Positions 21,331-53,619 of a DNA stretch of 64,000 nt are shown in pieces. The notes under the pieces are model-generated. The model did no database searches. It was given only the letters and a program-made list of their open reading frames with translations, and was not told the origin of the DNA. Positions within the stretch are counted from its first letter, which is position 1; every line of letters starts with the position of its first letter. The translations under genes were made by a program, and so were the position numbers. The stretch lies in the IMG/VR virus record IMGVR_UViG_3300035212_003113, positions 186,001-250,000 of that record; one strand, 5' to 3'.

Positions 21331-21672
21331 TCACTCTTCTACCGCAGCCAGCCCACGCAGTACACTATCAACTGCGTCTGCTTCGTTGGCCAATCCAGCT
21401 GCATCGAGCTCGTTCGCGACCTTTACGAGGCTAGTGAGCAGGTCGGCTTTACGAGCATTTAGGGCAAACTGAATCTGGCCTAATAGTTCTCGCTCGGCCT
21501 TTGTCAACTTCTTGTCGCCCTCTGCGCGCGCCTGGAGCTCCTTCTTTTTCTTTTTTAGAAGTGCGGTTGGGATCTTCTTGTCCGCAGGCACCTTGAGCTT
21601 TTTATGCAGCTCGCCCTTTTCCTCAAGATTAACGGCTCCCTGCATCCACTTGTTTTTTTTCTTAGCAGCCAC
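21331..21672 (-). CDS. Small Lys-rich basic protein with C-terminal shared helical module
   Basis: KWMQGAV...GELHKKLKVPADKKIP; SD GAGGTG; possible DNA-condensing core protein (inference). Confidence 0.75.
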   Translation of the reverse strand: MAAKKKNKWMQGAVNLEEKGELHKKLKVPADKKIPTALLKKKKKELQARAEGDKKLTKAERELLGQIQFALNARKADLLTSLVKVANELDAAGLANEADAVDSVLRGLAAVEE

Positions 21673-21769
21673 TGCGCACCTCTATAAAATGATCTAGCGC
21701 ATTGCTTTGCAATATTTAGTAGAGGGGCTGAACTGGCAGCCCTTGCTATTATTGAAGCAGTAGGAGCCC

Positions 21770-22522
21770 ATGAGCAACAAATTCCCTTTGTTTAAGACTG
21801 CTGGATCGGGGCTAAAGGCTGAGGCTGGCCTATCGGAGATTGCAGACAGCGTACTAGATAAGATAAAAGATCTTAGCGACAGTGATGCAGTCAAGACAAT
21901 AAAACAGTTGCCAAAGGACATCTATAACAAGCTATTTGGCGATGATGCCGACGAGCCTGTCAGTGATGACAAGCAGGCTCCGGCTCCTCCAAAGACAAAA
22001 AAGTATTATCAGCAGGTGCTCTCGGAGAGCGAGAAGAAGACGCCGGGTGGAAAGCCTATAACTGTCACAAAGCTGCAGACCATTCCTGGTCCCCCTGGAT
22101 CAGATGATGCTTTTTATGCACGAGTACTAAGTGGCATCGGCGCTCCTGTAACACCCGAGACAAAAAAATTTCTATATGCATGGAGAAAGGCAGAGGGAGG
22201 GATGGCTGCATTTAATCCATTTAATACCACAAGATCACTATCCGGCGAGACACTGACGAATTATAATAGCCACGGCGTAAAAAACTACCCCAGCGAAGAC
22301 CACGGGGTAGCTGCAACAATTGCCACGCTTCTGGGTGGAAAGTACAGTTCTATAGTGGATGCCCTCAGGGACCAGTCTCCTGGTGCCGCTATGCGTGCGG
22401 CGCAGGCATTGGCAAAGACTCCCTGGGGCACTGGTCGCGGAGTTATAAACGTACTGCGCAGCAAGCAGATCACTCGCATGCCAATTTACTGGCTACCTGA
22501 AGAAGGCAGTGCGCTGACCTAG
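21770..22522 (+). CDS. Putative lysozyme-fold/lytic transglycosylase-like protein
   Basis: AWRKAEGG...FNPFNTT...NSHGVKNYPS...G.AAT..TL..G.Y; SD AGGAG. Confidence 0.55.
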   Translation: MSNKFPLFKTAGSGLKAEAGLSEIADSVLDKIKDLSDSDAVKTIKQLPKDIYNKLFGDDADEPVSDDKQAPAPPKTKKYYQQVLSESEKKTPGGKPITVTKLQTIPGPPGSDDAFYARVLSGIGAPVTPETKKFLYAWRKAEGGMAAFNPFNTTRSLSGETLTNYNSHGVKNYPSEDHGVAATIATLLGGKYSSIVDALRDQSPGAAMRAAQALAKTPWGTGRGVINVLRSKQITRMPIYWLPEEGSALT

Positions 22523-22572
22523 ACAGGCTATTCATATGATCGGTTAATTCCGATCTTTATATGTAAAATTAC

Positions 22573-22583
22573 CTATTAATCCG
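22573..22583 (+). promoter_or_regulatory. Candidate late promoter CTATTAATCCG
   Basis: Identical 11-mer at 49822; CTA(T/A)TAA recurs upstream of structural genes. Confidence 0.5.
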
Positions 22584-22630
22584 GGAGCTCTATTTTGGCC
22601 ATAGGTCTAAATTACCGGTATTGGAGTAAC

Positions 22631-23110
22631 ATGAAGCTGGACATTGATTGGAATTCAATTGAGCAGGCGGTTCGGCCCTCAAAGCCTGCCACGCTGGACT
22701 TCTCAGCTGTTGGCAGCCAGTTTACAAAGGTAGCGTTTGACGTGTACAAGCGCACTGGCGAGGATTCGCTGTGGGAGCTTCGCGAGGCCGAGGACGGCCG
22801 CAAGATCCTGGTCGCTCTATATGAGGAATCAGAGGGCGAGACCGTTAAGACCGCATCTGCCTCTGAGTGGTCGGCACATGCCGACGCGTCGCGTCAATTT
22901 GTTACGCTAGCTTTCCAGGGCACTCCGGTCTACAAGTTCTCGTCCAAGGAGCACGGCTTTGATGAGGGCAGCGCAGCGCAGTTTGCTAACTACGTAGTTG
23001 CGCAGGCAAAGCAGCCCGACTTTATCGCAAAGATGGCATTCAGCCTTACCCCGGCTCGCCGGGCACACCTGCTAGGCATCGTCCGCAATCAGGGGAAAAC
23101 AAATGAGTGA
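22631..23110 (+). CDS. Hypothetical head-cluster protein
   Basis: SD GGAG before ATG 22631; TKVA, VKTA motifs. Confidence 0.75.
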   Translation: MKLDIDWNSIEQAVRPSKPATLDFSAVGSQFTKVAFDVYKRTGEDSLWELREAEDGRKILVALYEESEGETVKTASASEWSAHADASRQFVTLAFQGTPVYKFSSKEHGFDEGSAAQFANYVVAQAKQPDFIAKMAFSLTPARRAHLLGIVRNQGKTNE

Positions 23111-24602
23111 TATTAAGCACCAGCTTGATGCTTTTATTAAGGCTGCCTCTGCAGCGATTGTCGAAGACTCCAAAGATTATTTTATATCGGATGTACTCGG
23201 CCGCATTGAGACTGCCTATGGTCGTACAAAAGATGCCAGCCTGCATGCGCTTCACAACATCGTGAAGTCGCACAAGGACAGCGTAATCATCAGCCGCGCC
23301 GAACTGCGCAGCGGTTGGGAGCGCGTTGCTAGCCTTGGGCGTGCAGATGTGGTTCGCGACGAGATCGGCGACCTCCTGGGTGCCGCTGCTCCGGACACTG
23401 GTGTTGTGCGCAGCTCGGAAAAGACCGCAATGAATGCAGGTGGCGCTGCCATTGATATCTCGGTTGACGAGTCTGCCAAGTACGCAGCGCTATTTGGTGA
23501 GCACGTCGCCACCCGCTCTATCCGCAGTGGTGCCGATGCAGTGTCTGCCGAAATTCGCGACTATGGTCTTGACGCCAAGCTTACGCTGGCTGCCCAGGAT
23601 TCGCGCTTTGCTGTATTCGCAGCAGAGCTAAGCGATGGCAAGCGCACCGCCAGTGCACTGATTCCTGTTGAAGTAAAAAACGGCAACGTCCTGCTCCCGT
23701 CGGTATTCTTCGGCTCCACCTTTTCTGAATTTAATGCAGACAATCTCAACAAGTGGGCATCCGCTGGTGGTGCCGCATCGGTATCTGCCGTAGGCCTTCT
23801 GGATCATTTGAATAATCTTGCTGGTCCAGCGCTGGTCGAGGCCGGCAAGGCAGAGTGGGACGCCGGGATTGGCATTGCTGGCGGTACAGGCGTTGACCTT
23901 GGCCAGGCCGCTTCGCCTGTCCTAGCTAACGCAGAAGTTCCGGCCGAGCTCACTGCGGCTGCCCGTGATCTGGGTGGCACTGATTTCGAGCAGATCTTTA
24001 AAGAGGCTACTGTCAAGTGCGGCCAGGAGAAGCTTGCATCTGCTCGCCAGATGCTCGCCAATGAGCTGCGCTTTGCAAACGTTCGCCATGATAAGATTGT
24101 AGTCGACAGCGAGCTGGAGAACGGCATTCGCCTTGGCACGCATGTCCGCACGGCTGCTGGCAAACAGTACATAACCGTCCCAGTAGAATTTGATGGCAAG
24201 AGCGTACTGCTCCCCGGCTTCTTCCAGGCCGGCAACCGCGTACTTGAATTCTCGGATCACGCTCTGCACTCTGTTGCAGCAGATGGCGAGACGTCATTCC
24301 GGTCAATTGCAAGCAGCATGCGCACTGCTTCATTCTCTGACCTCTACAAAGTAGTCATCAAGAATGCTCAGTTTGGCAACCTAGCTGGTGCCGAAGAGGC
24401 GATGGCAGTTATCCTAGAAGAACATGGTGAAGAGCTCCATCGTCAGGCATTCCAGGATATGATCTCTGTCATTCAGAAGAGCGCCACCATGGAGCGTAAC
24501 GATTTCGACAAGTACGCAGCAGACCTGGCCGACGGCGGCAGCGAGACGGCTAATTATGTCTCTAACAAGGTAAACCTGGCCATGTTTGGCCTTCTGGATT
24601 GA
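23103..24602 (+). CDS. Hypothetical head-cluster protein with internal duplication
   Basis: IPVEVKNGNVLLPSVF vs VPVEFDGKSVLLPGFF. Confidence 0.8.
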   Translation: MSDIKHQLDAFIKAASAAIVEDSKDYFISDVLGRIETAYGRTKDASLHALHNIVKSHKDSVIISRAELRSGWERVASLGRADVVRDEIGDLLGAAAPDTGVVRSSEKTAMNAGGAAIDISVDESAKYAALFGEHVATRSIRSGADAVSAEIRDYGLDAKLTLAAQDSRFAVFAAELSDGKRTASALIPVEVKNGNVLLPSVFFGSTFSEFNADNLNKWASAGGAASVSAVGLLDHLNNLAGPALVEAGKAEWDAGIGIAGGTGVDLGQAASPVLANAEVPAELTAAARDLGGTDFEQIFKEATVKCGQEKLASARQMLANELRFANVRHDKIVVDSELENGIRLGTHVRTAAGKQYITVPVEFDGKSVLLPGFFQAGNRVLEFSDHALHSVAADGETSFRSIASSMRTASFSDLYKVVIKNAQFGNLAGAEEAMAVILEEHGEELHRQAFQDMISVIQKSATMERNDFDKYAADLADGGSETANYVSNKVNLAMFGLLD

Positions 24603-24604
24603 TT

Positions 24605-25129
24605 ATGCTTAAAATCGCAAGTATAGAAAAAGAAATCACAGAACTAGATGGTGCTGGTAGCGACGAGAAAACTCGTGCTGCCGCAGCTCTTGATTTTGCA
24701 GCATACGATACGGATGATCTGCGTCGCGTAGCTGCACTTGTAGTGGGCTTTGCCGATGCATTTGACGCAGACGGCCACAAGACTGCTGCAGATGCACTTG
24801 ATCGCGTTCTGAATAAGTTCGCTGCCTCGCCAGAAGCATTCTGGGATCCGCCAAAGCGCCGTCCTATGGACCTGGTGCCGCCAGTACGCTCTTCCCTGGG
24901 GGACATTGGACACAGTCTCAGTACGAGACACTCGCCCGATCTTCCTGGTGTCCAGCTCGTACGCGTTTCAGATGGCGTATACCGCGATCCAGTAACCAAC
25001 AAGACATATGACTTTCATCGTGGCTTTGTGCTGGATGACGGCACAAAATACGTCGGAGGCTCTGTATCGGCCCAGACGCCGGCCGGAAACGAGAAGTTTA
25101 GGCCACTGAAGCAGCAAATAGACTACTGA
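24605..25129 (+). CDS. Hypothetical head-cluster protein carrying the shared helical module
   Basis: MLKIAS N-terminus; FADAFDADGHKTAADALDRVL. Confidence 0.75.
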   Translation: MLKIASIEKEITELDGAGSDEKTRAAAALDFAAYDTDDLRRVAALVVGFADAFDADGHKTAADALDRVLNKFAASPEAFWDPPKRRPMDLVPPVRSSLGDIGHSLSTRHSPDLPGVQLVRVSDGVYRDPVTNKTYDFHRGFVLDDGTKYVGGSVSAQTPAGNEKFRPLKQQIDY

Positions 25130-25177: not shown

Positions 25178-25882
25178 ATGGCAACAAAAAACAAAGTACT
25201 GTCTCATATCGACCGAGATATAATTATCAAGATGCTTTCTGATGGCGAAAGTCCACAGAAAGTTGCCGAGTTTCTACAGACAAAGTATCCTGGGAAACAC
25301 AATGCACATCTAAATATTCATTGGCGAACAATCCACGACTTCCGTGATCGCTTCATGCCTTCTGGCAAACTAAGCAAAATTGCTATACAGGAGTCAGAGG
25401 TTCCGCGCTGGGCAAAAGAGAACGCGGATATAAAAGCCGAGCTAATGAAGAGCTCTGCGTACCAGAATGCAATAGCGAAGCTGGCCGAGGAAGAGATTAG
25501 CGTAAAAAAAGAATTGGTTCAGTTGCTTACTCTTGTCAAAGGCCGTATGGAGTTCTACTACAACGAGCTGGCAGTGAATAATAAGATGGATGAGCGCAAT
25601 GAGAAAGTGCTGCTAGAGCAGATGAAACTGCTGCTGTCCATACTCAGTCAACATGATAAAGCAGAGACGACGGCTGCTGCGGCTGCAACAGAAGTCAACG
25701 TTAGCATTAATATCGTAAAAGATCATGCACTTATAATAAGAGAAGCAGTGCGCGATACGCTAGACAGCGTAGACCCAAACCTCGCGATAGAGTTTATGGA
25801 GCGCCTTAATCTTAAAATGAAGGAGCTTGAGTATACGGAAACTACAGGTATTATTCCTATAGGCGGGAGAATAAATGTTTGA
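25178..25882 (+). CDS. Hypothetical protein, possible terminase small subunit
   Basis: N-terminal HTH-like segment, helical middle, VNVSINI strand; function is inference only. Confidence 0.4.
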   Translation: MATKNKVLSHIDRDIIIKMLSDGESPQKVAEFLQTKYPGKHNAHLNIHWRTIHDFRDRFMPSGKLSKIAIQESEVPRWAKENADIKAELMKSSAYQNAIAKLAEEEISVKKELVQLLTLVKGRMEFYYNELAVNNKMDERNEKVLLEQMKLLLSILSQHDKAETTAAAAATEVNVSINIVKDHALIIREAVRDTLDSVDPNLAIEFMERLNLKMKELEYTETTGIIPIGGRINV

Positions 25883-27233
25883 CTATTCCGATCCAAAGCT
25901 AGATGGCGAGATGCTCCAGATCCTGGAGCGTATAGCTGCGCGTGCAGCTGGCAGTGGCGTAAATCCAAATGACCTAGTAAAGTATCTTTTCTTAGAGAGG
26001 ATTGTACACGATGGACTGCGGCACATTGGACTGCATTTCTCCGATGCAGAACGAAGACCTCTGATTATGCACCTAATGCGGTGCGACGTGGATGATCTAA
26101 AAGGTATAGCAGATGAGATGGTCTCTGTGCTCAAGGGCATGAGTGATAAGAATATCACTTACAGCTTTAAGTTAGGAGACAGGATCAAGAAGGCTTATCC
26201 AGTACGGGTAGATACAGCTGTATATACGGGTATAAATAAAGATTTCCCGGGTCTGGCGTCGCGGGCCGCAAACTTAATATCTTCGGGCCTATTAGAACCA
26301 GACGCAATTCGTAGAACAATCTCTCACCTCCCAGTGAGCGACCGACTTGACTTCTTGACCTGGTATGGATTAAAGTACAAGTCAGGAAAAAATATTTCTT
26401 ACTTGGCTGCCCAGGAGGACGTCTTGATCAAAAAAGTTGCTAATGGGGACGATCAGTTTCCTAGCTATATCTACGAGTTTGAGCGCCGAAACAAGCCTGC
26501 TGCAGAGGTTCCGGTTTCGGTAAGCTTTGCAAAAGATTCTGACGCAGATCCAATGTCTGCCGCTGAGTTTAAAAAGATGCGGGAGAAGATGGTCGGCAGG
26601 ACATTTGCCATTGACAAACTTCTGGAGAAATACCGTCACCTTCTCAAGGAAGAGCAGTTTGATGCGGTAGAAGATAGCCTTAATGCGCTGCGCAAAAACA
26701 TCCGCAGACTAAAGGTTGCTACACTTAGTGACGCAATAGAAAAAACTGCATTCATGGCAGAGCAAAACGACTGGTTCGAGGGAGCAGATCTTATTCGCCG
26801 CCTGGCAGCTAGTGATGAGCAATTCGTAAAGATTGCAAATCTAATATCACGTCCAGAGGACTTGGGCAAGGTATTGAAGTCTCTTGATGAAATCTCCGGC
26901 TTCCTGCGTCAGCGCGCCATAATAAGAGAGCTGTCGGCGCGTGATATCGATATCTTTAATCTTGGATTTGGCCATATGCCCGAGATTGGCGACGCAGCGG
27001 CAAAGCTAATGGAGGCATTTAATGGCGCTGCAAATAAAATAGACGATCTTGTTAGCAAGCTTCGCGCAGAGCTCCAGCAGCAGACCGCTCCGAAGATGGC
27101 TCCGGAAGTGGTTAAAACGCTCGTCAAGCCCCAGGACCTGCCCCTTGTCAAGGCTCTTGAGCCAGGCGTCGCTCCTGCGCAACCAGAGCCATCTGGCGAA
27201 TTAGCTCCTCTGCCCAAGAAGCCTCTTCTATGA
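25875..27233 (+). CDS. Hypothetical head-cluster protein
   Basis: Several KxA motifs, one helical module, Pro-rich tail. Confidence 0.75.
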   Translation: MFDYSDPKLDGEMLQILERIAARAAGSGVNPNDLVKYLFLERIVHDGLRHIGLHFSDAERRPLIMHLMRCDVDDLKGIADEMVSVLKGMSDKNITYSFKLGDRIKKAYPVRVDTAVYTGINKDFPGLASRAANLISSGLLEPDAIRRTISHLPVSDRLDFLTWYGLKYKSGKNISYLAAQEDVLIKKVANGDDQFPSYIYEFERRNKPAAEVPVSVSFAKDSDADPMSAAEFKKMREKMVGRTFAIDKLLEKYRHLLKEEQFDAVEDSLNALRKNIRRLKVATLSDAIEKTAFMAEQNDWFEGADLIRRLAASDEQFVKIANLISRPEDLGKVLKSLDEISGFLRQRAIIRELSARDIDIFNLGFGHMPEIGDAAAKLMEAFNGAANKIDDLVSKLRAELQQQTAPKMAPEVVKTLVKPQDLPLVKALEPGVAPAQPEPSGELAPLPKKPLL

Positions 27234-30279: not shown

Positions 30280-30290
30280 GTGGAGCAAGC

Positions 30291-35601: not shown

Positions 35602-36495
35602 ATGCCAAAGTTCCTTTCTAAACGAGAAGAAAAGACCTGGAAAAAGGCCAAGTCTGCTTTTAAGAAGCAGAAGGGCCGAGCTCCGGGAAAAAAAGATTGG
35701 CCGCTAGTGATGCATATTTTCCAGGGCATGGAAAAGCGTGCAGTGAACATAGTTATTAAGCCGTACGAAATTTTTGTAAAAGAAGGCCTCGACCTGGTTG
35801 AACAGGTCTTTGGTGCTGGCTATTTCTCTGGCGTAAGTACCATTGTTGTGCAGCCGCACCAGACGCATCACTATGGAGAAGTCATTTCTGACGATCCAGA
35901 GACAATATACATATCGGCAGACAGGATAGAGCAGGAGTTTGCGCAGCATCCGTTAGAGAGGGCGTTTCAAATGGCCTCTACTCTTGTTCACGAAATGGGA
36001 CACATTAAATCTGGATTCAAGGGCGGAGAGGGCCCGGCCGAGGCCGAGGAGCATCGTTTTGCTCAGGTATTTAAGGAAAAGATTAAGTCAAATCCTGAGG
36101 CATTCAAGAAGTTCGATAAGAAATCCGTACTGCACGCCGACTTGGTTCGCCTCGCCAATGATGCAGATCTAGATGGTCACGTTGCGGCGGCCGACTTCTT
36201 AGATTCTGCTTTGCACAAAAAGGCAGATTCAACTGCAGATGTTGAGCAGATAATCCAAGGGATTATTGCACTTATCCGATACATGGTTAGCCGTGTATCA
36301 GATGAGAACAAGCAGAGCTTCAAAAACAGCCTTTTGCTAAAAATACGTCAGATATCCCCAGAGCTGTCTCAGAAAAGGAAGAACCCTTCTGCTGGCATAG
36401 GTGCCGTTTTTGGTCTTCTGAAGAACTTGATGGCAGGATTAGATCCTGCTCAGATAGGGTATATAGTTGGGCAGATTGCTTCGAGGGCAGCATGA
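35602..36495 (+). CDS. HExxH metallopeptidase-motif protein with shared helical module
   Basis: TLVHEMGH...GE..AE; LVRLANDADLDGHVAAADFLD. Confidence 0.65.
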   Translation: MPKFLSKREEKTWKKAKSAFKKQKGRAPGKKDWPLVMHIFQGMEKRAVNIVIKPYEIFVKEGLDLVEQVFGAGYFSGVSTIVVQPHQTHHYGEVISDDPETIYISADRIEQEFAQHPLERAFQMASTLVHEMGHIKSGFKGGEGPAEAEEHRFAQVFKEKIKSNPEAFKKFDKKSVLHADLVRLANDADLDGHVAAADFLDSALHKKADSTADVEQIIQGIIALIRYMVSRVSDENKQSFKNSLLLKIRQISPELSQKRKNPSAGIGAVFGLLKNLMAGLDPAQIGYIVGQIASRAA

Positions 36496-37748: not shown

Positions 37749-37885
37749 TAATTAAATACGGGACATCCGAGGCCGCCGAAGTAATCGATGCGAAGAATAT
37801 TCCTTCGTGGGTGACTCGCGATCCGCCGAAATCCGAGCAGGATGGCGTGACGGAGTCTGACGATAATACAGAGGAAAAAGAATGA
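37745..37885 (+). CDS. 46-aa micro-protein absent from the ORF track
   Basis: MIIKYGTSEAAEVIDAKNIPSWVTRDPPKSEQDGVTESDDNTEEKE; ATGA overlaps at both ends, SD AAGGA. Confidence 0.65.
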   Translation: MIIKYGTSEAAEVIDAKNIPSWVTRDPPKSEQDGVTESDDNTEEKE

Positions 37886-40800
37886 GTATTGTCAAGCATG
37901 CCTTTATCGATGGCGTTTCTATTGGAATACTAGATAACAACAAACTCAATGATGATCCGGGCGTACAAGCCCGGTTTGCGGCCGTCACGAACAAGCTTCG
38001 TGACGAGCAAAAGAAGCGCGGCAGCAAGGAGCTCTCTCCTTATGTGGATGACTTCCTTTATGCCAGCTGCATTATGATGCATGCTGCAGAGGCAGCACTT
38101 GTCAATCAGGAGACGGGTGAACCGATCAAGACTGCGGCCGGCAAGTCGGCTGCAGGTTGGTTCGAGAAATACGATATCGATGGCGGCAAAGAGACTGCTC
38201 GCTGGGTATCGCCAGATGGCATTCGCCCAGTAAAGAATAACAATGGAGATATCTTCCCAGAATCCGAGCTACTAAAGGCCTATAAGAACTGGGTCGGCAA
38301 GCCGCTCTGCAAAGATCATGTGTCTAGCTCCGTAGACGGCATCCGCGGCGTAATCGTAGATACGTATTATGATCCAAAGTTTAAGCGTGTTCACGCGCTA
38401 TTTGCACTTGATAAGAAGAACTATCCCGATCTCGCCCGCAAGGTAGAGGCCGGCTATGCCACCAATGTCTCTATGGGCACGGCGGTTGGTCGCTCTATCT
38501 GCAGCGAGTGCCAGAACGTTGCAACCGTAGCATCTGAATTCTGCTCGCACGTCAAGTCGCGTACGCATTACGGCGAGATCAACTTTGATCTAAATCCAAT
38601 TGAGCTGAGCATCGTTGTCACCGGTGCAGATCCGCGTGCGAAGATTCGCAAGATTGTTGCAAGCCTAGACGAGTACCGTGCCCAGGCAGAGGAGCTGCGC
38701 AAGGTAAAAGGCGCTCCGCTAGAGGAGCTTGATCAGATTTCTGCAAACATCAAGGCTGCCGCAGCAGTTGCGGAAGAGATCGACGTAAAGCCGGTACTGT
38801 CCGACATAATCAGTATAATGGAGACATCAGAGCCTGGCAGTGGCGCCTTTGGTGATGCAACAGATAAGCTTGTCGCTCTGCTCTCGGAAGAGGGTAATGC
38901 TGAAGCCGTTTACTCTAACATCAAAGATGATCGCCCTCTGGTCGATTCGTTGCTAAATGCTCTACGAAGAGCTAAGGCACAGGATCTGGTGGAAAAGCTG
39001 AATTCTCTAAGGATTCAGAATGTGTCAGTGCCATCGATGCAGTCAACGGATACGACCAAGACGGTTGGCAGTGTAGATGGCGCGCTATCTAATTTGAATA
39101 CTAGCATAAAACCCAGCTCAACGCTGGGAGATATAGAGCTAGAGAACCAGGTAAGTGCGTTTGCTCCAGGTACCCGTGACATGTCCGGTCTGCAGCAATT
39201 TGCAGCATTATATACAGATGGCGTAGCCACAAAAGACGGGCAGCTGCTTGAAAAAGCAGCTAATGATCTGGCAGGCAGAATAACATCTATTAAAAACAGT
39301 TTGGATAGTTTGAAATCGTGTCTCCCGACCCAGAAGGCGGGAGTGGGAACAGGAGATATTATGACGTTTGATGAACTACGGAAGCGTGCTAACCTGCGGA
39401 AGAAGGCTTACATGCAGGGAACTGAGGAACCAAAGTCTTACCCCGCCATGGGAAATCCGGATCTACGTGATGGCGACCATCACCTACACGGTGAAGAGCT
39501 CGACACCTCCGTAGCTAATCCAGACCAGAAGACGAAGGAAATGCTGCTTCGCGCGTCGCTTAACGAGCGCCGTACTGCCCGCGCAGAGAAGCTGAAGGCC
39601 ATTGCTGAAATGGCTGTTGTCGTCAAGGACCAGTCAGGCAATCCAGCCGGCGCAATTGTCAACAAGAAGTTCGTTCCAAAGGCAATGGCTGATGATGGCC
39701 ACGACGCCGATGACGCCGATCACGCTGAAGACGGCGATCACGCCGCTGATGCCGAGCTCAAGAAGGCAGAGGCCGCTCTCGTTCAGCGCCTTGAGATGCT
39801 GAAGGAAGCCGCTAAGAAGAAGGCCAAAAAGCCAGTTAAGGAAGAAGAAGAGGATAAGCCTGCCAAGGGCGGCAAGGATGCCAAGAAGGCTAAGCCAACC
39901 AAGGGCGACGACAAGATGGACAAGATGAAGAAGAAGGCTTATCCACAGGGCACTGCTGAGCCAGAGTCATACAAGCCAATGGGCGATCCAGACCTCCGCG
40001 ACGGCGATCATCACCTGGGTGGCAAGGAGCTCGACACCAAGGCAGGCAATCCTGATCAGAAGGTCAAGGAGCTAATTCAGCGCGCCGGCCTAAAGGCTCG
40101 TCTCACCAAGTCGGCCAACGTTGCAAACTCACGTTGGGCAGTCCTCGCAGGCGACAAGGAAGTGTTCTCGGTCACCGCCGGCGATGCGTACAATGTTCAC
40201 CTTAATAAGCAGAGCGATGTTGCTGGCAAGACCTGGGGCGATCTGTTCGTTTCGCCAGCCTATGGCAAGCAGCTTATGGCGCAGATTCGCGCTGGCAAGA
40301 TTAGCAAGTTGGCAGAAGAGCTTGATGCTGCGAAGCAGTCAGTTGATGCTCCGGCCGCTGATGCAGCTCCAGCCCCCGCCGCTGCACCAGCTCCGGCCCC
40401 AATGGTAGATGTCGTTCCAGAAGCCAAGGGCGATGACGACATGAAGGACAAGCTCATGGCCGCTCTCGAGAAGCTCGAGGAGTGCATGCAGAATCTAAAA
40501 GACATTGTCATGGGCTCCGATAAGGGCGTAGACAACGTTGATGTAGATACCATGGCCGCTACGGCTTCACTCGACCGTGGCATGTTCGAGGCTCACGCAG
40601 AGCTGGCTTCGCTGGCTAGCGAGCTCAGCTTCCTCGCCAAGGAAGCAAATCTGAGCGTTCCGTCGGTACGCCTTGCTGCTCGCGCGGCAATCCGTGACGG
40701 TCACCTCGCTGCAATCGAGGCTAACGAGCGCATCGCTGAGTACGCCGATGCCTGCGACGGCGGCATGTATGTTCTCGATGAGGAGGAGCTAGAAGAGGTC

Positions 40801-41691
40801 GCCGAGGAAGTCGAGGAGGCTATTGAAGAGCACGATGAGGAGGAGCACGGCGATCTAGACAAGGCCCTAGAGGACCTCCGCAAGGAGCTTGCCGAGCTCG
40901 AGGACAAGGTTGATGAGCTCGAGGAAGAGGTCGAGGAAGGCGAAGAGGACGAGGAGAAGGAGTCGGACGCTATGGACGACAAACTCGCCGCCCGCGCCGC
41001 AATGCGCCAGCAGCTCGTTGCTCGCGCCGCGAAGGCTGATATGGTCACCGCAGATCCGATGTTGAATATTCACGGCAAGGGCGAGGGCAAGCTCGACCTC
41101 GGCATGAATATCTCGGATGATGGCGATGTCGTTGAGAGCGTATTCGAGGTACAGCAGAAGGTCATGAATACTCTTGGCGAGAAAGTCAAGAAGGCCGCTG
41201 CCGGTATCGCTGAGGCCGTCCGCAAGGGCGTCCTGAAGGATTCGCAGCTCGATGTACTCGTTGCTACCGCTGCAGTCGATGCAGAGGCCGTTAAGTACTA
41301 CCGCGATTACTTCGCCGGCGCCGATGCCGACTTCGCCAAGGGCCTTGTTGCAGAGTTCAAGAAGTCTGCTTCCGCCACAGAGGACGTTGGCTTCCGTTAC
41401 AAGCGCGCATACGCAGTAGCAATCGATGCACAGGCTCGCAACCTAATTGGCACCGGCCGCGCCGCTCTTGATGAGTGCGCCGACACGCTGGCCAACGGCA
41501 GCGACGCGAACTTCGATAGCTTCAAGCGCATGGTTGGCAGTGTCAAGACCTCTGTCCGTACGGCCGGTGTCGTACCCCAGATGGGCGTCGTTGATGGCGG
41601 CGAAGCCACGAATACGCGCACGGCCTCGGACAATGGTTCCGTTGATGTACGCGATTGGCGCAGCCTAGGCAAAGCGCTGTTCGATATCTGA
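37882..41691 (+). CDS. Prohead maturation protease fused to scaffold/core protein
   Basis: NNNGDIF, GKPLCKDH (His), VSMG (Ser), CxxC...CxH, ELSIV..GAD as in HK97/assemblin-fold proteases; long charged coiled-coil C-terminus. Confidence 0.8.
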   Translation: MSIVKHAFIDGVSIGILDNNKLNDDPGVQARFAAVTNKLRDEQKKRGSKELSPYVDDFLYASCIMMHAAEAALVNQETGEPIKTAAGKSAAGWFEKYDIDGGKETARWVSPDGIRPVKNNNGDIFPESELLKAYKNWVGKPLCKDHVSSSVDGIRGVIVDTYYDPKFKRVHALFALDKKNYPDLARKVEAGYATNVSMGTAVGRSICSECQNVATVASEFCSHVKSRTHYGEINFDLNPIELSIVVTGADPRAKIRKIVASLDEYRAQAEELRKVKGAPLEELDQISANIKAAAAVAEEIDVKPVLSDIISIMETSEPGSGAFGDATDKLVALLSEEGNAEAVYSNIKDDRPLVDSLLNALRRAKAQDLVEKLNSLRIQNVSVPSMQSTDTTKTVGSVDGALSNLNTSIKPSSTLGDIELENQVSAFAPGTRDMSGLQQFAALYTDGVATKDGQLLEKAANDLAGRITSIKNSLDSLKSCLPTQKAGVGTGDIMTFDELRKRANLRKKAYMQGTEEPKSYPAMGNPDLRDGDHHLHGEELDTSVANPDQKTKEMLLRASLNERRTARAEKLKAIAEMAVVVKDQSGNPAGAIVNKKFVPKAMADDGHDADDADHAEDGDHAADAELKKAEAALVQRLEMLKEAAKKKAKKPVKEEEEDKPAKGGKDAKKAKPTKGDDKMDKMKKKAYPQGTAEPESYKPMGDPDLRDGDHHLGGKELDTKAGNPDQKVKELIQRAGLKARLTKSANVANSRWAVLAGDKEVFSVTAGDAYNVHLNKQSDVAGKTWGDLFVSPAYGKQLMAQIRAGKISKLAEELDAAKQSVDAPAADAAPAPAAAPAPAPMVDVVPEAKGDDDMKDKLMAALEKLEECMQNLKDIVMGSDKGVDNVDVDTMAATASLDRGMFEAHAELASLASELSFLAKEANLSVPSVRLAARAAIRDGHLAAIEANERIAEYADACDGGMYVLDEEELEEVAEEVEEAIEEHDEEEHGDLDKALEDLRKELAELEDKVDELEEEVEEGEEDEEKESDAMDDKLAARAAMRQQLVARAAKADMVTADPMLNIHGKGEGKLDLGMNISDDGDVVESVFEVQQKVMNTLGEKVKKAAAGIAEAVRKGVLKDSQLDVLVATAAVDAEAVKYYRDYFAGADADFAKGLVAEFKKSASATEDVGFRYKRAYAVAIDAQARNLIGTGRAALDECADTLANGSDANFDSFKRMVGSVKTSVRTAGVVPQMGVVDGGEATNTRTASDNGSVDVRDWRSLGKALFDI
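39361..41691 (+). CDS. Predicted nested in-frame scaffold protein (776 aa) from internal ATG
   Basis: AGGAG at 39351-39355, CTATTAA at 39287, apparent codon-usage shift downstream. Confidence 0.6.
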   Translation: MTFDELRKRANLRKKAYMQGTEEPKSYPAMGNPDLRDGDHHLHGEELDTSVANPDQKTKEMLLRASLNERRTARAEKLKAIAEMAVVVKDQSGNPAGAIVNKKFVPKAMADDGHDADDADHAEDGDHAADAELKKAEAALVQRLEMLKEAAKKKAKKPVKEEEEDKPAKGGKDAKKAKPTKGDDKMDKMKKKAYPQGTAEPESYKPMGDPDLRDGDHHLGGKELDTKAGNPDQKVKELIQRAGLKARLTKSANVANSRWAVLAGDKEVFSVTAGDAYNVHLNKQSDVAGKTWGDLFVSPAYGKQLMAQIRAGKISKLAEELDAAKQSVDAPAADAAPAPAAAPAPAPMVDVVPEAKGDDDMKDKLMAALEKLEECMQNLKDIVMGSDKGVDNVDVDTMAATASLDRGMFEAHAELASLASELSFLAKEANLSVPSVRLAARAAIRDGHLAAIEANERIAEYADACDGGMYVLDEEELEEVAEEVEEAIEEHDEEEHGDLDKALEDLRKELAELEDKVDELEEEVEEGEEDEEKESDAMDDKLAARAAMRQQLVARAAKADMVTADPMLNIHGKGEGKLDLGMNISDDGDVVESVFEVQQKVMNTLGEKVKKAAAGIAEAVRKGVLKDSQLDVLVATAAVDAEAVKYYRDYFAGADADFAKGLVAEFKKSASATEDVGFRYKRAYAVAIDAQARNLIGTGRAALDECADTLANGSDANFDSFKRMVGSVKTSVRTAGVVPQMGVVDGGEATNTRTASDNGSVDVRDWRSLGKALFDI
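39394..40092 (+). repeat. Two copies of a 56-aa repeat (39394-39561, 39925-40092)
   Basis: KKAY.QGT.EP.SY..MG.PDLRDGDHHL.G.ELDT...NPDQK.KE...RA.L, 38/56 identical by hand. Confidence 0.9.
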
Positions 41692-41985: not shown

Positions 41986-42178
41986 TATCGCAGATGAGAT
42001 CGCAAAGGGAATGCAGGATGCCTTGACAGAGAATGCTCCCAAGATCGAAGGGCACTTTTCAGGCGTTGCTAACCAGCTGGCCAATACTGCCAATGCGTTA
42101 GATGCTGCCGGTAGCCCGTTGGCTGCACGAGTAGACTCGCTGCTTGGTCAGATGGTCAGTGTACTAGGAGAGGACTGA
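41972..42178 (+). CDS. Small protein consisting largely of the shared helical module
   Basis: LANTANALDAAGSPLAARVDSLL; SD GAGG/AGGA. Confidence 0.7.
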   Translation: MSSIDIADEIAKGMQDALTENAPKIEGHFSGVANQLANTANALDAAGSPLAARVDSLLGQMVSVLGED

Positions 42179-43477: not shown

Positions 43478-43482
43478 AAAAT

Positions 43483-43872
43483 ATGTCTAAGTTTGTTGAT
43501 GTAGACGGCATTCTTGCCGAGGTTCAGAAGAAGATGGCCGGCCAGTCGACCATGCCGAAGAGCGTCTTCAAGCAGGACGCCGCTCGTGAAGACGTTGATG
43601 TTCAGAGCGAGCTAAACAAGCGCGCCGAGGCCTACTTCAGTAAGATCCTTGACGAAGCTCACCCGAAGTCAGTAAAGCTCGAGGGCATCGACGCAACGGT
43701 AATGACTCTAGAGGATCGCCATGCTGCGGCCATGGAGACCTTGAGCGACGCAAAGCGCAAGAAGCTTGCGGCCGTTGCTATGCAGCTAGTTCATGTTGCG
43801 AATCAGGCTGAAAAAGATGGCCTAACAAAGCAGGCCGCTGATCTTCGTATTGCTGCTCGCAAGCTAGTTTGA
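43483..43872 (+). CDS. Hypothetical internal protein with AHP motif and helical module
   Basis: ILDEAHPK; LVHVANQAEKDGLTKQAADL. Confidence 0.75.
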   Translation: MSKFVDVDGILAEVQKKMAGQSTMPKSVFKQDAAREDVDVQSELNKRAEAYFSKILDEAHPKSVKLEGIDATVMTLEDRHAAAMETLSDAKRKKLAAVAMQLVHVANQAEKDGLTKQAADLRIAARKLV

Positions 43873-47236: not shown

Positions 47237-49045
47237 ATGTCTATCGCTGACAATATAGAAAAAGAATTTGCCAGACTGCTTCGCGAGTCCAGATCTGTTG
47301 CGCGCCATAAGCTAGTTGCCCAGGCCGCCGACAAGGAAGACGCCATAAGAGCCAAGCGCCCTCGCAAAGAGAAGAACAAGAAGAGCGTCATCGAAGAAGC
47401 TCATCCGGGCGAAGTGTTTGTTGCCGAGTCTGACGGGCTTGGTGGCCTAGCCGGAAACCCAGAGCAGGTACAACAGCAGATACTCGACGCACTGAATCGC
47501 CGTCCTTCTGCTTTTCCATATCAGGGCCTTGTGGCAAATGCCATGGCTGACTTTGAGAAGACCGCAGAAGTGCTCGAATCACACAATCTATTTAGCGAGG
47601 CCGCAGCAATCCGCAAGGTTGCCGCGGAGTGGCTATCGGTGTTAGAAAGGCGAGGGGGCTTAAAAAAAAAGGCATCAGATGGGGTTCCGGATCAAGTGAT
47701 CTCTCCTAGCGGAGAGGTGATAGAAGATTTTATCAATGTCCCTAGTGCTCGTCCAAATGCGCCCGGATCGGCAAAGACGCCTCCTTCTGCTTCTCCTCCC
47801 CCATCCGGAGCGTTCATCCCTGATGCAGAAGAGGTCCGCGGCGGTGCGGCAGCAGCTTCAGCCGAAGGGAAGGCGGCTACTCGTGTTGTTGGTCCAGTAC
47901 CAGTAGATCCATCTGCGGCCGTGGCAGATGCAAAAAAAGCTGCAGATGCTACACAGCCTCTTGCCGATGCTGGAAAAGCTGCCGCAAAGGCAAAAGGCTT
48001 CTTCTCAAAGGCACTGAAATATCTTGGCGTGGCTGGCGATGCGGCCATGATCGGCTCGTATGCCCTTGACAAGGATTGGACATCTGTAATAGGTACTGTT
48101 GGCGCGGGCGGTGTGGCCGCAGCTGCTGCCGCATTGAGTGCACCGTTGGCCGCAGCTGCAGGAGGAGTAACAGCAGCAGCAGGAATAGGCATAGGCATAT
48201 ACAGCTTGATCAATGAGACTATTCTCGGAGCTTGGCAAGAGGATCTAGAAACGGACATAAATGATGCCATTGGGGCTGTCCAGTCAGTTCTAGATGATAA
48301 TGACACGGATACTGCCCAGAGGTCTGCAGCCCAGACCATGATGAATGAGCTGCAAGCTATTGTCAAAAATATATCCGTTTTGCGCCAGGAGGCTAAGAAA
48401 GGTGAGCGGGCAAACATGAACGCAGTGGCCCAAGGGATGTCTGATATCGAAGATTCTGTGCGCGCGGCTCGCATAGCGGCAGATGATCTAAAAGGTGCGA
48501 CCGTATTTGATCTTGGGGTGCGAAAAGTCATCGCCACTCTTGATGATATAGAAGAGTCTAATCAGGAGTTCAACGAAGAACTGCAGAGCAAGGTAGATCC
48601 ATCAATGTCCAAACTTACGGATGCCATTAAGCAGATTTCTGCTGCGGCAGCAGCGAGAAAGGGCATAATAGGAGAGCTTAATATAAATGTGGGCGGCTCT
48701 TCGCCAGGCTCCTCATCATCCTCTTCGTCTCAAGGCTCTCCAGCTGTCTCCACGGATGATCCTGCTCATATCAAAGAAGTGCAGGCTGCAATAAACGACC
48801 TGCAGGCCGCAGACGCAGGATTCAGCCCAAGGCTTGCTCTAACTGGAAAGTGGGATCCGCCGACAGAAAAGGCGCTTGAGTCCTACGTTCAGCTTTGGTT
48901 AGAAGTCGACCCAGGTCTTGTCCAGGTTATAAGTGTTGAAAGCCTTAAGGACGCTGAGGGCAGCGTTATACGCGCCATGAATCGCGACTATCGCAATAAA
49001 GAGGAAGTAATCGCCTCTATCATGAGAGCTTCGACTAATAAATAG
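47237..49045 (+). CDS. Putative ejection/internal protein with hydrophobic hairpin and C-terminal PG-binding-like domain
   Basis: AHP motif, helical module, LKKKAS, long Ala/Gly hydrophobic stretch, IKEVQAAIN...LTGKWDPPTEKAL. Confidence 0.6.
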   Translation: MSIADNIEKEFARLLRESRSVARHKLVAQAADKEDAIRAKRPRKEKNKKSVIEEAHPGEVFVAESDGLGGLAGNPEQVQQQILDALNRRPSAFPYQGLVANAMADFEKTAEVLESHNLFSEAAAIRKVAAEWLSVLERRGGLKKKASDGVPDQVISPSGEVIEDFINVPSARPNAPGSAKTPPSASPPPSGAFIPDAEEVRGGAAAASAEGKAATRVVGPVPVDPSAAVADAKKAADATQPLADAGKAAAKAKGFFSKALKYLGVAGDAAMIGSYALDKDWTSVIGTVGAGGVAAAAAALSAPLAAAAGGVTAAAGIGIGIYSLINETILGAWQEDLETDINDAIGAVQSVLDDNDTDTAQRSAAQTMMNELQAIVKNISVLRQEAKKGERANMNAVAQGMSDIEDSVRAARIAADDLKGATVFDLGVRKVIATLDDIEESNQEFNEELQSKVDPSMSKLTDAIKQISAAAAARKGIIGELNINVGGSSPGSSSSSSSQGSPAVSTDDPAHIKEVQAAINDLQAADAGFSPRLALTGKWDPPTEKALESYVQLWLEVDPGLVQVISVESLKDAEGSVIRAMNRDYRNKEEVIASIMRASTNK

Positions 49046-51917: not shown

Positions 51918-52264
51918 CGGACTACTATCTTAATACAACGAGCGGTACCGCTACGTCTGCAGTGCGGGCCGCCTCTTATGTCAGGCAAGAGATTCCATTT
52001 GTCCCTCTGCCTGACCAGGTGTCTGCGTCATCGAATGTCTCGTGGGGGTCGGTGGCCGTTGCCATTGCCTTTTCTTTTCAGGCCAGTGACCTACCTCCTG
52101 CAATTTATCCAGAGTCCGCGACAGCGTCTGCCGTATCATCCAGCGGACTGTTTTTTGGAGCGAATCTTGCGCCAGTAGCGGCATCGGCAATTGTATTACA
52201 GACCGACACTCCGGAGCCACCTCCTTCTGGTGGTGGAGCTGGGTTGCGTTTTTATTGGGGTTGA
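51914..52264 (+). CDS. Small Ala/Ser-rich hypothetical protein
   Basis: ATGA overlap; SGGG linker ending in FYWG. Confidence 0.65.
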   Translation: MTDYYLNTTSGTATSAVRAASYVRQEIPFVPLPDQVSASSNVSWGSVAVAIAFSFQASDLPPAIYPESATASAVSSSGLFFGANLAPVAASAIVLQTDTPEPPPSGGGAGLRFYWG

Positions 52265-52266
52265 AT

Positions 52267-52452
52267 GTGAAAAAGATAGATATAAAAATAGAGGAAGAGT
52301 CTCCGCACACGGTCAGTATTTATGTTGACGAGCATCATGTTGCTTGGCAGCCATTTGAACCAGGAAGCTTATTGCCATGGTCATCAAAGGCGGCTGCTCA
52401 GGCATGGGGTGATGAATGGGTACTGAAAAATGTATCACAAGAAAGCGAATAA
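52267..52452 (+). CDS. Small hypothetical protein, possible fibre-assembly chaperone
   Basis: QPFEP...PWSSKAAAQAW; start uncertain. Confidence 0.55.
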   Translation: MKKIDIKIEEESPHTVSIYVDEHHVAWQPFEPGSLLPWSSKAAAQAWGDEWVLKNVSQESE

Positions 52453-52458
52453 TAGAGG

Positions 52459-52484
52459 AAGGGCCGTCGGCCCTTTTTCTTTTT
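52459..52484 (+). terminator. Intrinsic terminator
   Basis: AAGGGCC-gtc-GGCCCTT-TTTCTTTTT. Confidence 0.75.
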
Positions 52485-52614
52485 GGCTATCAATTTGGAT
52501 AGCACTGTTTAAGCATGCCTATTAATTCTGTAGGTAATTTTCGTAATTAATTTTGGTGACTCTTGTCCCCAAAGTGCAAGTAAGAGTAAGTAAAGTTCAC
52601 TTCGGAGAAAAACA

Positions 52615-53619
52615 ATGTCAAATCTTTTTGATAACTCAGGCGAGCTCGGTGGTCTGACCACCCGCGACGCGCTGAAGAGCCTCGTTCGCATTGCCAAGGT
52701 TCTAGAGGAGGGCATGCCCTCGAACGCCGTCGCCGCTGGTCGTCCTTCGACCACCGAGACGCAGCGTGATGAGCTCGTCCGCCAGGCCATCCTCGATCAG
52801 GGCGGCAAGGTCGCTCTCGCCCAGGCCATGGCGCTCCCAATCCGCCGCAACCTTGATTACTCGGGCGTTGCTCGCCGCGGCCTCGTCGTTGACGAGCTCG
52901 CCACCGGCGTTCTCCCGCTTTACGAGCGCGATATCGATGTCGCTGCATTCGTAATCTCGGCCAATGGCGCAGTTCCAGAGAGCCCCGTCCGTGGCGACCG
53001 CGTATTCGTTCCAGAGTTCGACATCGCCTGTCACCCACTCGTTCGTATCCGTGAGGCTCGCCAACGCCGCTTCAACGTCATCGAGCGCACCGTTCAGAAG
53101 GCCAAGCAGGAGATCGCCGCGACCGAGGACGCTAACTTCTTCGCCGCTCTCGACTTCGCTGCTGACGCCGCCCTCGGTGGTGAGAACACCGCCCAGGTTC
53201 TCGGTGCCCGCATCTCGCGCGCCGACATGGTTGAGATCAAGTCAGAGGTCGATCAGTGGGACTTGCTCACCAGCAAGTTCTTCATGAACATCCGCGACTT
53301 CCAGGACCTGCTCCTCTGGACGTCACAGGGTGGTACGTCGGCTGCCGAGGTTGATCCGGTAACGCACCGCGAGATCCTCCAGACCGGTCTCTACGCCAAG
53401 CTGTTCACCGCTGACATCATCGTCAGCAAGCTCGTTCCCTTCGGCAGCGTCTTCGGCTGCGCAGAGCCCGACATGGTCGGCGTAATGCCAATTCGCCAGA
53501 ACGTCGAAGTCGTTCCGAACGACAAGATGGATCGCCTCAGCCTCGGCTGGACGGTATTCGAGACCATCGGCATCGGCGTAGTCAACGCTCGCGGCGTTGC
53601 AGTCGGTCGCAAGGCCTGA
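52615..53619 (+). CDS. Major capsid protein (HK97 fold)
   Basis: LAQAMALPIRRNLDYSG..R..L.VD.L..G..P.Y, VPEFDIA, AKQEIAATEDANF, GWTVFETIGIGVVNARG; strongest codon bias in the window; SD GGAG. Confidence 0.85.
   Translation: MSNLFDNSGELGGLTTRDALKSLVRIAKVLEEGMPSNAVAAGRPSTTETQRDELVRQAILDQGGKVALAQAMALPIRRNLDYSGVARRGLVVDELATGVLPLYERDIDVAAFVISANGAVPESPVRGDRVFVPEFDIACHPLVRIREARQRRFNVIERTVQKAKQEIAATEDANFFAALDFAADAALGGENTAQVLGARISRADMVEIKSEVDQWDLLTSKFFMNIRDFQDLLLWTSQGGTSAAEVDPVTHREILQTGLYAKLFTADIIVSKLVPFGSVFGCAEPDMVGVMPIRQNVEVVPNDKMDRLSLGWTVFETIGIGVVNARGVAVGRKA

What the first reader, a model, noticed from the sequence alone, without database searches (positions are those of the whole stretch)
21331..52712. 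A shared ~30-aa helical module on many unrelated head-cluster proteins: candidate capsid-targeting address
Seen, consensus L-x-x-h-A-[ND]-x-[LA]-[DE]-x-x-G-x3-[EA]-A-D-x-[LV]-D: 21331 LVKVANELDAAGLANEADAVDSVL; 24605 VVGFADAFDADGHKTAADALDRVL; 35602 LVRLANDADLDGHVAAADFLDSAL; 41972 LANTANALDAAGSPLAARVDSLL; 43483 LVHVANQAEKDGLTKQAADLRIAA; 47237 FEKTAEVLESHNLFSEAAAIRKVA; 25875 IEKTAFMAEQNDWFEGADLIRRLA. Weaker copies occur in 42893 and 20655. The MCP N-arm has a half copy (LVRIAKVLEEG). The module sits at the N-terminus, middle or C-terminus and is usually bordered by KxA. Established: T4 internal proteins use a short capsid-targeting sequence that the prohead protease removes. Inference: a portable helix-turn-helix tag that co-assembles with the scaffold or MCP N-arm and loads diverse cargo, giving a programmable protein-delivery system that I do not know to be described.
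Basis: partly seen in the sequence, partly recalled or inferred. Interest (0 to 1): 0.85.

Follow-up and report, generated by a model that had tools for sequence, protein, structure and literature searches.

The report
Portable helical-hairpin tag in huge phages
Seven otherwise unrelated proteins of this uncultivated huge phage share a real, about 32-residue two-helix module that is found almost only in phages, is in no Pfam family, and most likely acts as a docking tag, possibly for loading proteins into the head, although that role is not proven.

Summary
The window is part of a 371-kb IMG/VR huge-phage contig whose capsid protein is 45% identical to that of Bacillus phage G. It carries seven copies of a helix-turn-helix module.

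- **Clear copies (5):** g21331, g24599, g35602, g41972 and g43474 score 46-60 bits. The next real hit scores 5.5 bits and the shuffled maximum is 12.4.
- **Diverged copies (2):** g47237 and g25875 are supported by orthology and profile comparison.
- **Unsupported claims:** the "weaker copies" in g42893 and g20655, and the capsid-protein "half copy".

The module is a large undescribed family. A profile search found 1166 protein clusters at E<=1e-3, and no Pfam model matched. It is essentially phage-specific: a strict DNA pattern hit 43 IMG/VR loci but only one genuine copy in 596 Gb of cellular genomes. About half of the copies sit at the extreme N-terminus, often on runs of neighbouring small genes. 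Orthologues carry it on either side of the same domain. AlphaFold2 predicts a hairpin resembling a single TPR repeat (pLDDT 90).

Carriers are concentrated between the portal, protease and capsid genes, and their other domains include cell-wall hydrolases and a membrane-segment protein. This fits a head-loading tag like the T4 capsid targeting sequence. No cultured relative or virion proteome exists, and some carriers lie outside the head genes, so targeting is plausible (about 0.4) but unproven.

The parts
21358..21429 (-). Canonical module copy at the C-terminus of g21331 (21331-21672, aa 82-105 of 113)
   Evidence: 48.5 bits in the six-frame scan. Retrieved by leave-one-out at 12.9 bits against a decoy maximum of 7.5. 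Coordinates.
24740..24811 (+). Canonical module copy near the N-terminus of g24599 (24599-25129, aa 48-71 of 176), upstream of a conserved C-terminal domain (aa 107-160)
   Evidence: 48.1 bits. Leave-one-out score 16.0 bits. Orthologues in L059, L072, L075, L078, L079, L084 and L095 carry the module on either side of the same domain.
26736..26807 (+). Diverged module copy inside g25875 (25875-27233, aa 288-311 of 452), followed by an acidic, Pro-rich linker in orthologues
   Evidence: Orthologue alignment shows T-A-N-x-h-x-K-x-G-h-x-x-x-A-E-x-L-x-K-h-A-Q-E. hhalign against the module profile gives probability 85%, E 6e-6, in register.
36142..36213 (+). Canonical module copy in the middle of g35602 (35602-36495, aa 181-204 of 297). 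The carrier also has an HEMGH zinc-peptidase motif.
   Evidence: 46.6 bits. Leave-one-out score 11.6 bits against a decoy maximum of 8.0. The orthologue in L051 keeps the module.
42077..42145 (+). Canonical module copy, one residue shorter, at the C-terminus of the 68-aa protein g41972 (41972-42178), just upstream of the conserved gene g42178
   Evidence: 60.0 bits. Orthologues in L003-L008 keep it. A small module or module-like protein sits upstream of the g42178 homologue in L029, L033, L034, L043, L082 and L140.
43786..43857 (+). Canonical module copy at the C-terminus of g43474 (43474-43872, aa 105-128 of 132)
   Evidence: 50.2 bits. Found by the three-seed model at E 0.0035 before it was added to any model.
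47552..47623 (+). Diverged module copy in g47237 (47237-49045, aa 106-129 of 602). The carrier continues into Gly/Ala-rich hydrophobic segments.
   Evidence: The region around the module is orthologous to L008, L010 and L011 proteins (the three alignments together span aa 26-142). The L010 copy scores 11.1 bits and the L011 copy 47.5 bits at the same place. Close relatives P0153-P0179 conserve it.
43657..43665 (+). 'AHP' motif of g43474, about 45 aa upstream of its module. It is part of a recurring unit AHP ... h-x-E-[NTD] ... module.
   Evidence: The same unit occurs in the g47237 family and between the two modules of about 1000-aa proteins of relatives.
47399..47407 (+). 'AHP' motif of g47237, about 50 aa upstream of its module
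37882..41691 (+). Context: 1269-aa protein with an N-terminal prohead-protease-like domain. It is a candidate core or scaffold partner (inferred).
   Evidence: phrog_18299 'head maturation protease', aa 117-228, E 7e-14. 42% identity to the phage G gp19 ORF over aa 119-261. Runs of tagged genes sit directly upstream of its homologues in L054, L076 and L077.
52615..53619 (+). Context: major capsid protein. Its conserved N-terminal helix (aa about 17-33, 52663-52713) is a candidate partner only and is not a module copy.
   Evidence: PHROG 2522, E 8e-63. 45% identity to the phage G capsid protein. The N-terminus is conserved in 15 relatives. No module-model score.

Best explanation
**What it is (shown).** The seven peptides are copies of one mobile protein-protein interaction module of about 32 residues. 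It is phage-specific and absent from Pfam. It forms an alpha-hairpin: helix, a D-x-x-G turn, helix. Its residue spacing resembles a single TPR repeat. A global consensus is M-I-K-E-L-I-K-L-A-N-x-L-D-x-K-G-L-x-K-E-A-D-x-L-D-x-I-I-K-K-x-A. L9, A13, L16, D17, G20, A25 and D29 are at least 96% conserved.

**What it does (inferred).** A lone hairpin exposes a hydrophobic face, so it probably docks onto a common partner or onto other copies. The most likely role is as an assembly address. It would recruit varied proteins into the prohead core of this huge-phage clade so that they are packaged and later ejected. Such proteins include peptidases, cell-wall hydrolases, a membrane-segment protein and many small variable proteins. 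This would parallel the capsid targeting sequence of the T4 internal proteins.

**Candidate partners (inferred).** The long C-terminal part of the protease-domain protein g37882, the conserved N-terminal helix of the capsid protein, or other copies of the module.
For: Family is real and portable:
- Searches give the statistics.
- 1166 clusters at E<=1e-3 among 1.84 billion representatives, often with 2-3 copies per protein.
- 163 of 314 strong copies start within the first six residues and are followed by an acidic, disordered stretch.
- The module lies on either side of the same domain in g24599 orthologues.

Hairpin: AlphaFold2 gives pLDDT 90 with helices at 2-17 and 21-38.

Phage-specific: 43 IMG/VR loci match a strict DNA pattern, against one genuine copy in 596 Gb of cellular genomes.

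Head association:
- All seven window carriers lie among the 36 genes at 20-54 kb. None lies among the 40 genes of the replication and tail-fibre flanks (Fisher p=0.004).
- Four carriers lie between portal and capsid genes.
- In the relative L140, four of the eight genes between the protease-protein homologue and the g49117 homologue next to the capsid gene carry the module.
- Runs of tagged genes sit just upstream of the protease-protein homologue in L054, L076 and L077.
- Other domains on carriers include LysM with a cell-wall hydrolase, and an HEMGH peptidase motif.
- g47237 has membrane-like segments typical of ejection proteins.
- Phage G, Tunturi_5 and LR745208 have no module in their head regions. 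Phage G's annotated capsid protein is about 45 residues shorter at the N-terminus, and the other two lack the conserved helix.
Against: - There is no direct evidence of packaging. No cultured relative or virion proteome exists.
- Three window carriers (g21331 on the minus strand, g24599, g25875) lie in a block of unknown function that includes a poly(A)-polymerase-like nucleotidyltransferase.
- In relatives some tagged small genes lie downstream of the capsid gene on the opposite strand, or in regions without recognisable structural genes.
- The resemblance to the capsid-protein N-arm is not significant.
- Whether the tag is cleaved off is unknown. In the g47237 family a possible cleavage site lies upstream of the module, which would leave the module on the mature protein, unlike the T4 sequence.
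- The link between module absence and a short capsid-protein N-terminus rests on three phages and is confounded by phylogeny.
Confidence: 0.4

Rival explanations
1. Generic self-association module. The hairpin pairs with another copy, either as a Rop-like four-helix bundle or by TPR-like stacking. It simply makes its carriers dimeric or multimeric, with no link to the capsid.
For: - A lone hairpin needs a partner for its hydrophobic face.
- Many proteins have 2-3 copies separated by long linkers.
- The nearest structural shapes include Rop, designed hairpin dimers and TPR units.
- Carriers also occur outside head genes.
Against: - Near-invariant surface-type residues (N14 73%, D17 99%, D29 98%) across hundreds of unrelated carriers point to one common conserved partner surface.
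- Placement at the extreme N-terminus followed by a disordered acidic linker looks like a tag rather than a structural dimer interface.
- Carriers are enriched in the head-morphogenesis interval.
Confidence: 0.25
2. Hub-binding tag for a partner outside the capsid. The module would tether many phage proteins to one host or phage hub, such as a chaperone, a protease adaptor for timed turnover, or a replication or assembly compartment.
For: - N-terminal tags sit on runs of small variable genes, in regions with no recognisable structural genes in L064, L085, L088 and L089/L092.
- g21331 and similar genes lie on the opposite strand from the late genes.
- The other domains on carriers are very diverse: PilZ, EF-hand, zinc ribbons, ferritin-like, MgtE_N-like.
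Against: - No candidate hub was identified.
- The module is essentially absent from cellular genomes, so it does not copy a host motif.
- Carriers are concentrated next to the protease, capsid and portal genes in this window and in L140, L076, L077 and L082.
Confidence: 0.2
3. No real feature: chance resemblance among amphipathic Ala/Asp/Leu-rich helices, or a recent local duplication.
For: - The module is short and of simple composition.
- The best sequence matches in the PDB are designed helical-repeat proteins.
Against: - Leave-one-out and decoy tests.
- Conservation in orthologues.
- 1166 significant clusters worldwide.
- Nucleotide identity between copies of only 32-53%.
Confidence: 0.02

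Closest known systems
Capsid targeting sequence (CTS) of the phage T4 internal proteins IPI-III and Alt (established knowledge; reviewed in PMC3012670)
   Same: A short conserved address is attached to unrelated, fast-evolving small proteins whose genes are often clustered. Here the carriers lie near prohead core and protease genes, and a protease-domain core protein is encoded nearby.
   Different: The T4 sequence is about 10 residues, always N-terminal, has a different sequence, and is cut off by gp21 at L/I-x-E. This module is a hairpin of about 32 residues. It can be N-terminal, internal, C-terminal or repeated. Neither its cleavage nor its packaging has been shown.
Helix-turn-helix coat-binding domain of scaffolding proteins (P22 gp8 C-terminus, phi29 gp7; established knowledge)
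   Same: A small helical hairpin. Here several copies are C-terminal (g41972, g43474, g21331) and encoded just upstream of the capsid gene region. One distant carrier gave a weak Phage_T7_Capsid match (E 1e-4).
   Different: Those domains occur once, on a dedicated scaffolding protein. This module is spread over many unrelated proteins and gene runs. No sequence similarity to solved scaffolding proteins was found. Binding to the coat protein is untested.
Tetratricopeptide (TPR) repeat
   Same: Unit length of about 34 residues. Helix-turn-helix with small or hydrophobic residues at a TPR-like spacing (L9, L12, A13, L16, G20, A25, I32). Designed TPR and helical-repeat proteins are the nearest sequence and shape matches.
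   Different: The units are single or widely spaced, not tandem arrays. No Pfam TPR model matches, even at E<=10. Invariant D17 and D29 are not TPR features. Structural matches are not significant (E>1).
Encapsulin cargo-loading peptides
   Same: The concept of a short portable tag that loads varied cargo into an HK97-fold shell.
   Different: Those peptides are short, extended terminal sequences with Gly/Ser/Leu-type motifs, not helical hairpins. There is no sequence relationship (my own knowledge; not tested beyond Pfam and PDB searches).

Membership tests
T4-type capsid targeting sequence | About 10-residue N-terminal propeptide with the T4 consensus | tested here: not met
   The module is a hairpin of about 32 residues with a different consensus. 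In the window it is internal or C-terminal.
T4-type capsid targeting sequence | Removed by the prohead protease at L/I-x-E after assembly | not testable with these tools
   There is only a suggestive h-V-E-[NT] motif upstream of the module in the g47237 family. No proteomic data exist.
T4-type capsid targeting sequence | Sufficient to load a foreign protein into the prohead core | not testable with these tools
   Needs an experiment. No cultured relative exists.
TPR repeat (Pfam TPR clan) | Recognised by TPR profile models | tested here: not met
   No TPR family was reported for the 10 window proteins scanned (E<=0.1) or among 137 + 82 carriers (E<=1e-3). None was reported for isolated modules at E<=10.
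TPR repeat (Pfam TPR clan) | Tandem array of three or more 34-residue units forming a superhelix | tested here: not met
   Copies are single, or 2-3 per protein separated by tens to hundreds of residues.
TPR repeat (Pfam TPR clan) | Helix-turn-helix unit with the characteristic small/hydrophobic spacing | tested here: inconclusive
   AlphaFold2 predicts a hairpin. The spacing matches by eye. PDB sequence hits are to designed TPR or helical-repeat proteins. Foldseek matches to TPR units have E>1.
Scaffolding-protein coat-binding helix-turn-helix (P22 gp8 type) | Helical hairpin at the C-terminus of a dedicated scaffolding protein encoded next to the coat gene | tested here: inconclusive
   The hairpin is predicted, and three copies are C-terminal on small proteins in the head region. 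No scaffolding protein has been identified, and the module also sits on many other proteins.
Scaffolding-protein coat-binding helix-turn-helix (P22 gp8 type) | Binds the coat-protein N-arm | not testable with these tools
   No multimer prediction or binding assay is available. The resemblance to the capsid-protein N-arm is not significant.

The most novel reading that the evidence does not exclude
The hairpin is a universal cargo address of a large clade of uncultivated huge phages. Dozens of proteins per genome would be loaded into the prohead by docking a single TPR-like unit onto a common core (the protease-scaffold protein or the capsid-protein N-arm) or by stacking on each other. They would then be delivered into the host with the DNA. 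That would be a modular, evolvable effector-packaging system far larger than the T4 internal-protein system, and one that could be re-used to load foreign cargo.
Probability: 0.3. Interest if true: 0.8.

Novelty: new variant of a known kind. Interest (0 to 1): 0.62.

Why it matters
Huge phages carry hundreds of genes of unknown function, and how their large heads recruit internal and ejected proteins is largely unknown outside T4 and the phiKZ-like phages. A sequence-defined tag shared by more than a thousand protein clusters would give two things. It would allow the packaged or ejected proteome of uncultivated huge phages to be predicted from sequence alone. It would also provide a handle for loading experiments. 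If the tag turns out to bind something other than the head, it is still a large unannotated phage-specific interaction module that links many orphan genes into one network.

Tried and rejected
- **DNA search of the terminase-portal region against cultured phages:** no match.
- **Protein searches against cultured phages** with P0003, P0029 and the L011 g47237-like protein: no match, so no proteome could be borrowed.
- **Phage G, Tunturi_5, LR745208 and Rctr197k head regions:** no convincing module.
- **Pfam and PHROG scans** of carriers and neighbours: no family for the module, and most neighbours are unannotated.
- **Locus search with the module alignment:** Replaced by a degenerate DNA pattern.
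- **Literature searches** for capsid-targeting and jumbo-phage terms and for the motif strings found no description. The jumbo-phage survey PMC7824862 has no passage on such a module under the terms searched (packaged into, helical domain, N-terminal, phage G, TPR).
- **ESM Atlas:** only viral hypothetical clusters.
- **Structure of the conserved neighbour g42178:** low confidence (pLDDT 57), all-beta. It was not used for fold search.
- **Homologue search for g47237:** only close, unnamed relatives.
- **Context of gene runs outside head regions:** uninformative.
- **Rejected as module copies:** g42893, g20655 and the capsid-protein N-arm.
- **Rejected as explanations:** recent duplication and chance similarity.
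Full report
**Setting.** The window matches, at 100% protein identity for the two genes tested, a 371,675-bp IMG/VR contig, IMGVR_UViG_3300035212_003113.

- 0-15 kb is a replication module with a Pol III alpha-like polymerase, a UvsX-like recombinase and a primase.
- From about 20 kb a mostly plus-strand block runs through a sigma-70 region-4 protein (g19986), several unannotated genes and a poly(A)-polymerase-like nucleotidyltransferase (g27230).
- It continues with the large terminase (30261-32150), the portal (32159-34000) and a 1269-aa protein with a prohead-protease-like N-terminal domain (g37882).
- Further on lies the major capsid protein (52615-53619). It matches PHROG 2522 at E 8e-63 and is 45% identical to the Bacillus phage G capsid protein.
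- No cultured phage is closer than phage G, whose portal is 29% identical.

- A model of any two of the three best copies recovers the third as the best non-seed hit at 11.6-16 bits. The maxima in 100 locally shuffled proteomes were 7.5-8.6 bits.
- A three-seed model found g43474 and g41972 on its own, at E 0.0035 and 0.0067.
- A 21-sequence model built from the window's five clear copies plus copies from related loci, scanned over all six frames, gives exactly five strong hits at 46-60 bits. The next hit scores 5.5 bits and the decoy maximum is 12.4.
- g47237 is a diverged copy. Its N-terminal region is orthologous to proteins of L010 and L011 that carry a canonical copy at the same position.
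- g25875 is also a diverged copy. Its orthologues show T-A-N-x-h-x-K-x-G ... A-E-x-L-x-K-h-A-Q-E followed by an acidic, Pro-rich linker. This segment aligns in register with the module profile at hhalign probability 85% and E 6e-6.
- A model of the diverged subtype cross-retrieves g21331 (21.8 bits) and g24599 (12.6 bits), against a decoy maximum of 9.1.
- The suggested copies in g42893 and g20655, and the capsid-protein 'half copy', get no support.
- Nucleotide identity between copies is 32-53%, so they are old.

**What the module is.**

- AlphaFold2 on the module alignment predicts helix 2-17, a three-residue turn and helix 21-38, at pLDDT 90.
- A profile search of 1.84 billion representative proteins found 1166 with E<=1e-3. 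Many have two or three copies.
- Of 314 strong copies in the retrieved proteins, 163 begin within the first six residues. After the [KR]-K-x-A end of helix 2 the sequence turns acidic and unconserved.
- L9, A13, L16, D17, G20, A25 and D29 are 96-99% conserved.
- No Pfam or PHROG model covers the module.
- The only PDB sequence matches are designed helical-repeat or TPR proteins. The nearest shapes are TPR units and Rop-like hairpins, none of them significant.
- The residue spacing resembles one TPR unit, but copies are never in tandem arrays.

**Distribution.** A strict DNA pattern for L-A-N-x-L-D-x-x-G-x3-E-A-D hit 43 stretches in IMG/VR.

- Roughly two-thirds of these loci belong to the same broad phage clade. 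About half of the 43 carry a terminase or portal about 33-50% identical to the window's, and others share the g22595-g28836 block upstream of the terminase or a g37882 homologue.
- The same pattern in 596 Gb of bacterial and archaeal genomes gave 41 stretches. Only one is a genuine module, on a 1.5-kb binned contig. The rest are partial TPR-like look-alikes.
- Related phages hold runs of neighbouring small genes that each begin with the module, in L064, L067, L076, L077, L085, L088, L089/L092 and L091.
- Orthologues of g24599 carry the module on either side of the same conserved domain. This demonstrates portability directly.
- Other domains on carriers include LysM plus a cell-wall hydrolase, MgtE_N-like helices, PilZ, EF-hand, zinc ribbons and a ferritin-like domain.

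**Link to the head.**

- All seven window carriers lie among the 36 genes at 20-54 kb. None lies among the 40 flanking genes (Fisher p=0.004).
- Four carriers lie between the portal and capsid genes.
- In L140, four of the eight genes between the protease-protein homologue and the g49117 homologue next to the capsid gene are carriers.
- In L054, L076 and L077 the tagged runs abut the protease-protein gene.
- g43474, the g47237 family and the roughly 1000-aa two-module proteins share a larger unit: AHP ... G-x-V-E-[NT] ... P-x-G ... module. Its V-E-[NT] resembles a T4-type cleavage site, which is inference only.
- g47237 continues into Gly/Ala-rich hydrophobic segments like those of ejection proteins.
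- Phage G, Tunturi_5 and LR745208 show no module in their head regions. Phage G's annotated capsid protein is about 45 residues shorter at the N-terminus, and the other two lack the conserved helix. That is only three cases, and they are confounded by phylogeny.

**Weighing.** The family, its hairpin nature, its portability and its restriction to phages are well supported. The head-targeting role fits the gene neighbourhoods, the kinds of carrier proteins and the analogy with the T4 internal-protein loci. It remains inference for four reasons. No virion proteome exists. Three window carriers lie in a block of unknown function. Some tagged genes in relatives lie on the opposite strand or far from structural genes. 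No partner has been identified. I put head targeting at about 0.4, plain self-association at about 0.25 and a non-capsid hub at about 0.2.

**Novelty.** I found no description of the module in Pfam, PHROGs, the PDB or the searchable literature. As a concept it would be a new variant of a known kind, namely a portable capsid or assembly address.

Noticed in passing
window 43657-43665 and 47399-47407; L010:336-1751, L011:7719-9167, L014:7278-8603, L140:6910-8205: A second shared element: an 'AHP' motif, followed about 15-25 residues later by G-x-V-E-[NT], then P-x-G and the module. The same unit lies between the two modules of about 1000-aa proteins of relatives. The V-E-[NT] resembles a T4-type prohead-protease site.
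   Followed up: partly
window 47237-49045 (aa about 250-330): After its module, g47237 has long Gly/Ala-rich hydrophobic stretches and a weak tape-measure PHROG match. It looks like a membrane-inserting ejection protein rather than a scaffold.
   Followed up: no
window 35602-36495 and 34420-35586: g35602 carries an HEMGH zinc-peptidase motif upstream of its module. Its neighbour g34420 has a weak Peptidase_M23 match (E 9e-4).
   Followed up: no
window 24917-25078 (g24599 aa 107-160): A small conserved domain, 36-61% identical in eight related loci, with no Pfam family. The module moves around it in different orthologues.
   Followed up: partly
window 37882-41691: The prohead-protease-like domain (aa about 119-261, 42% identical to the phage G gp19 ORF) is fused to about 1000 further residues. 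Relatives keep this long form at 730-1250 aa.
   Followed up: partly
window 42178-42885: g42178 is a 235-aa all-beta protein, 38-66% identical across the clade, with no annotation. A small module or module-like protein sits just upstream of it in the window and in at least seven relatives. The AlphaFold2 model was poor (pLDDT 57).
   Followed up: partly
L140:9080-12367; L042:15906-17654; L059:1871-4714 and L073:5137-7947: Core genes of relatives are interrupted. The capsid gene of L140 is split around two LAGLIDADG endonuclease genes. The L042 terminase is in four ORF pieces. Two portal ORFs carry an insertion of about 370 residues.
   Followed up: no
window 55978-61229: g55978, g56967 and g58467 share N-terminal and C-terminal segments (30-50% identity) with weak tail-fibre matches. 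This looks like a cassette of related fibre-like genes.
   Followed up: no
window 19986-20378: A small protein with a sigma-70 region 4 domain (E 1.6e-8) sits at the head of the conserved block that leads into the terminase. It may be a late transcription factor.
   Followed up: no
L139 (Virus Rctr197k, KX853510.1): Many genes in this distant relative are annotated only as misc_feature 'similar to ...' rather than CDS. Its capsid protein has a Gln-rich N-terminal extension of about 150 residues.
   Followed up: no
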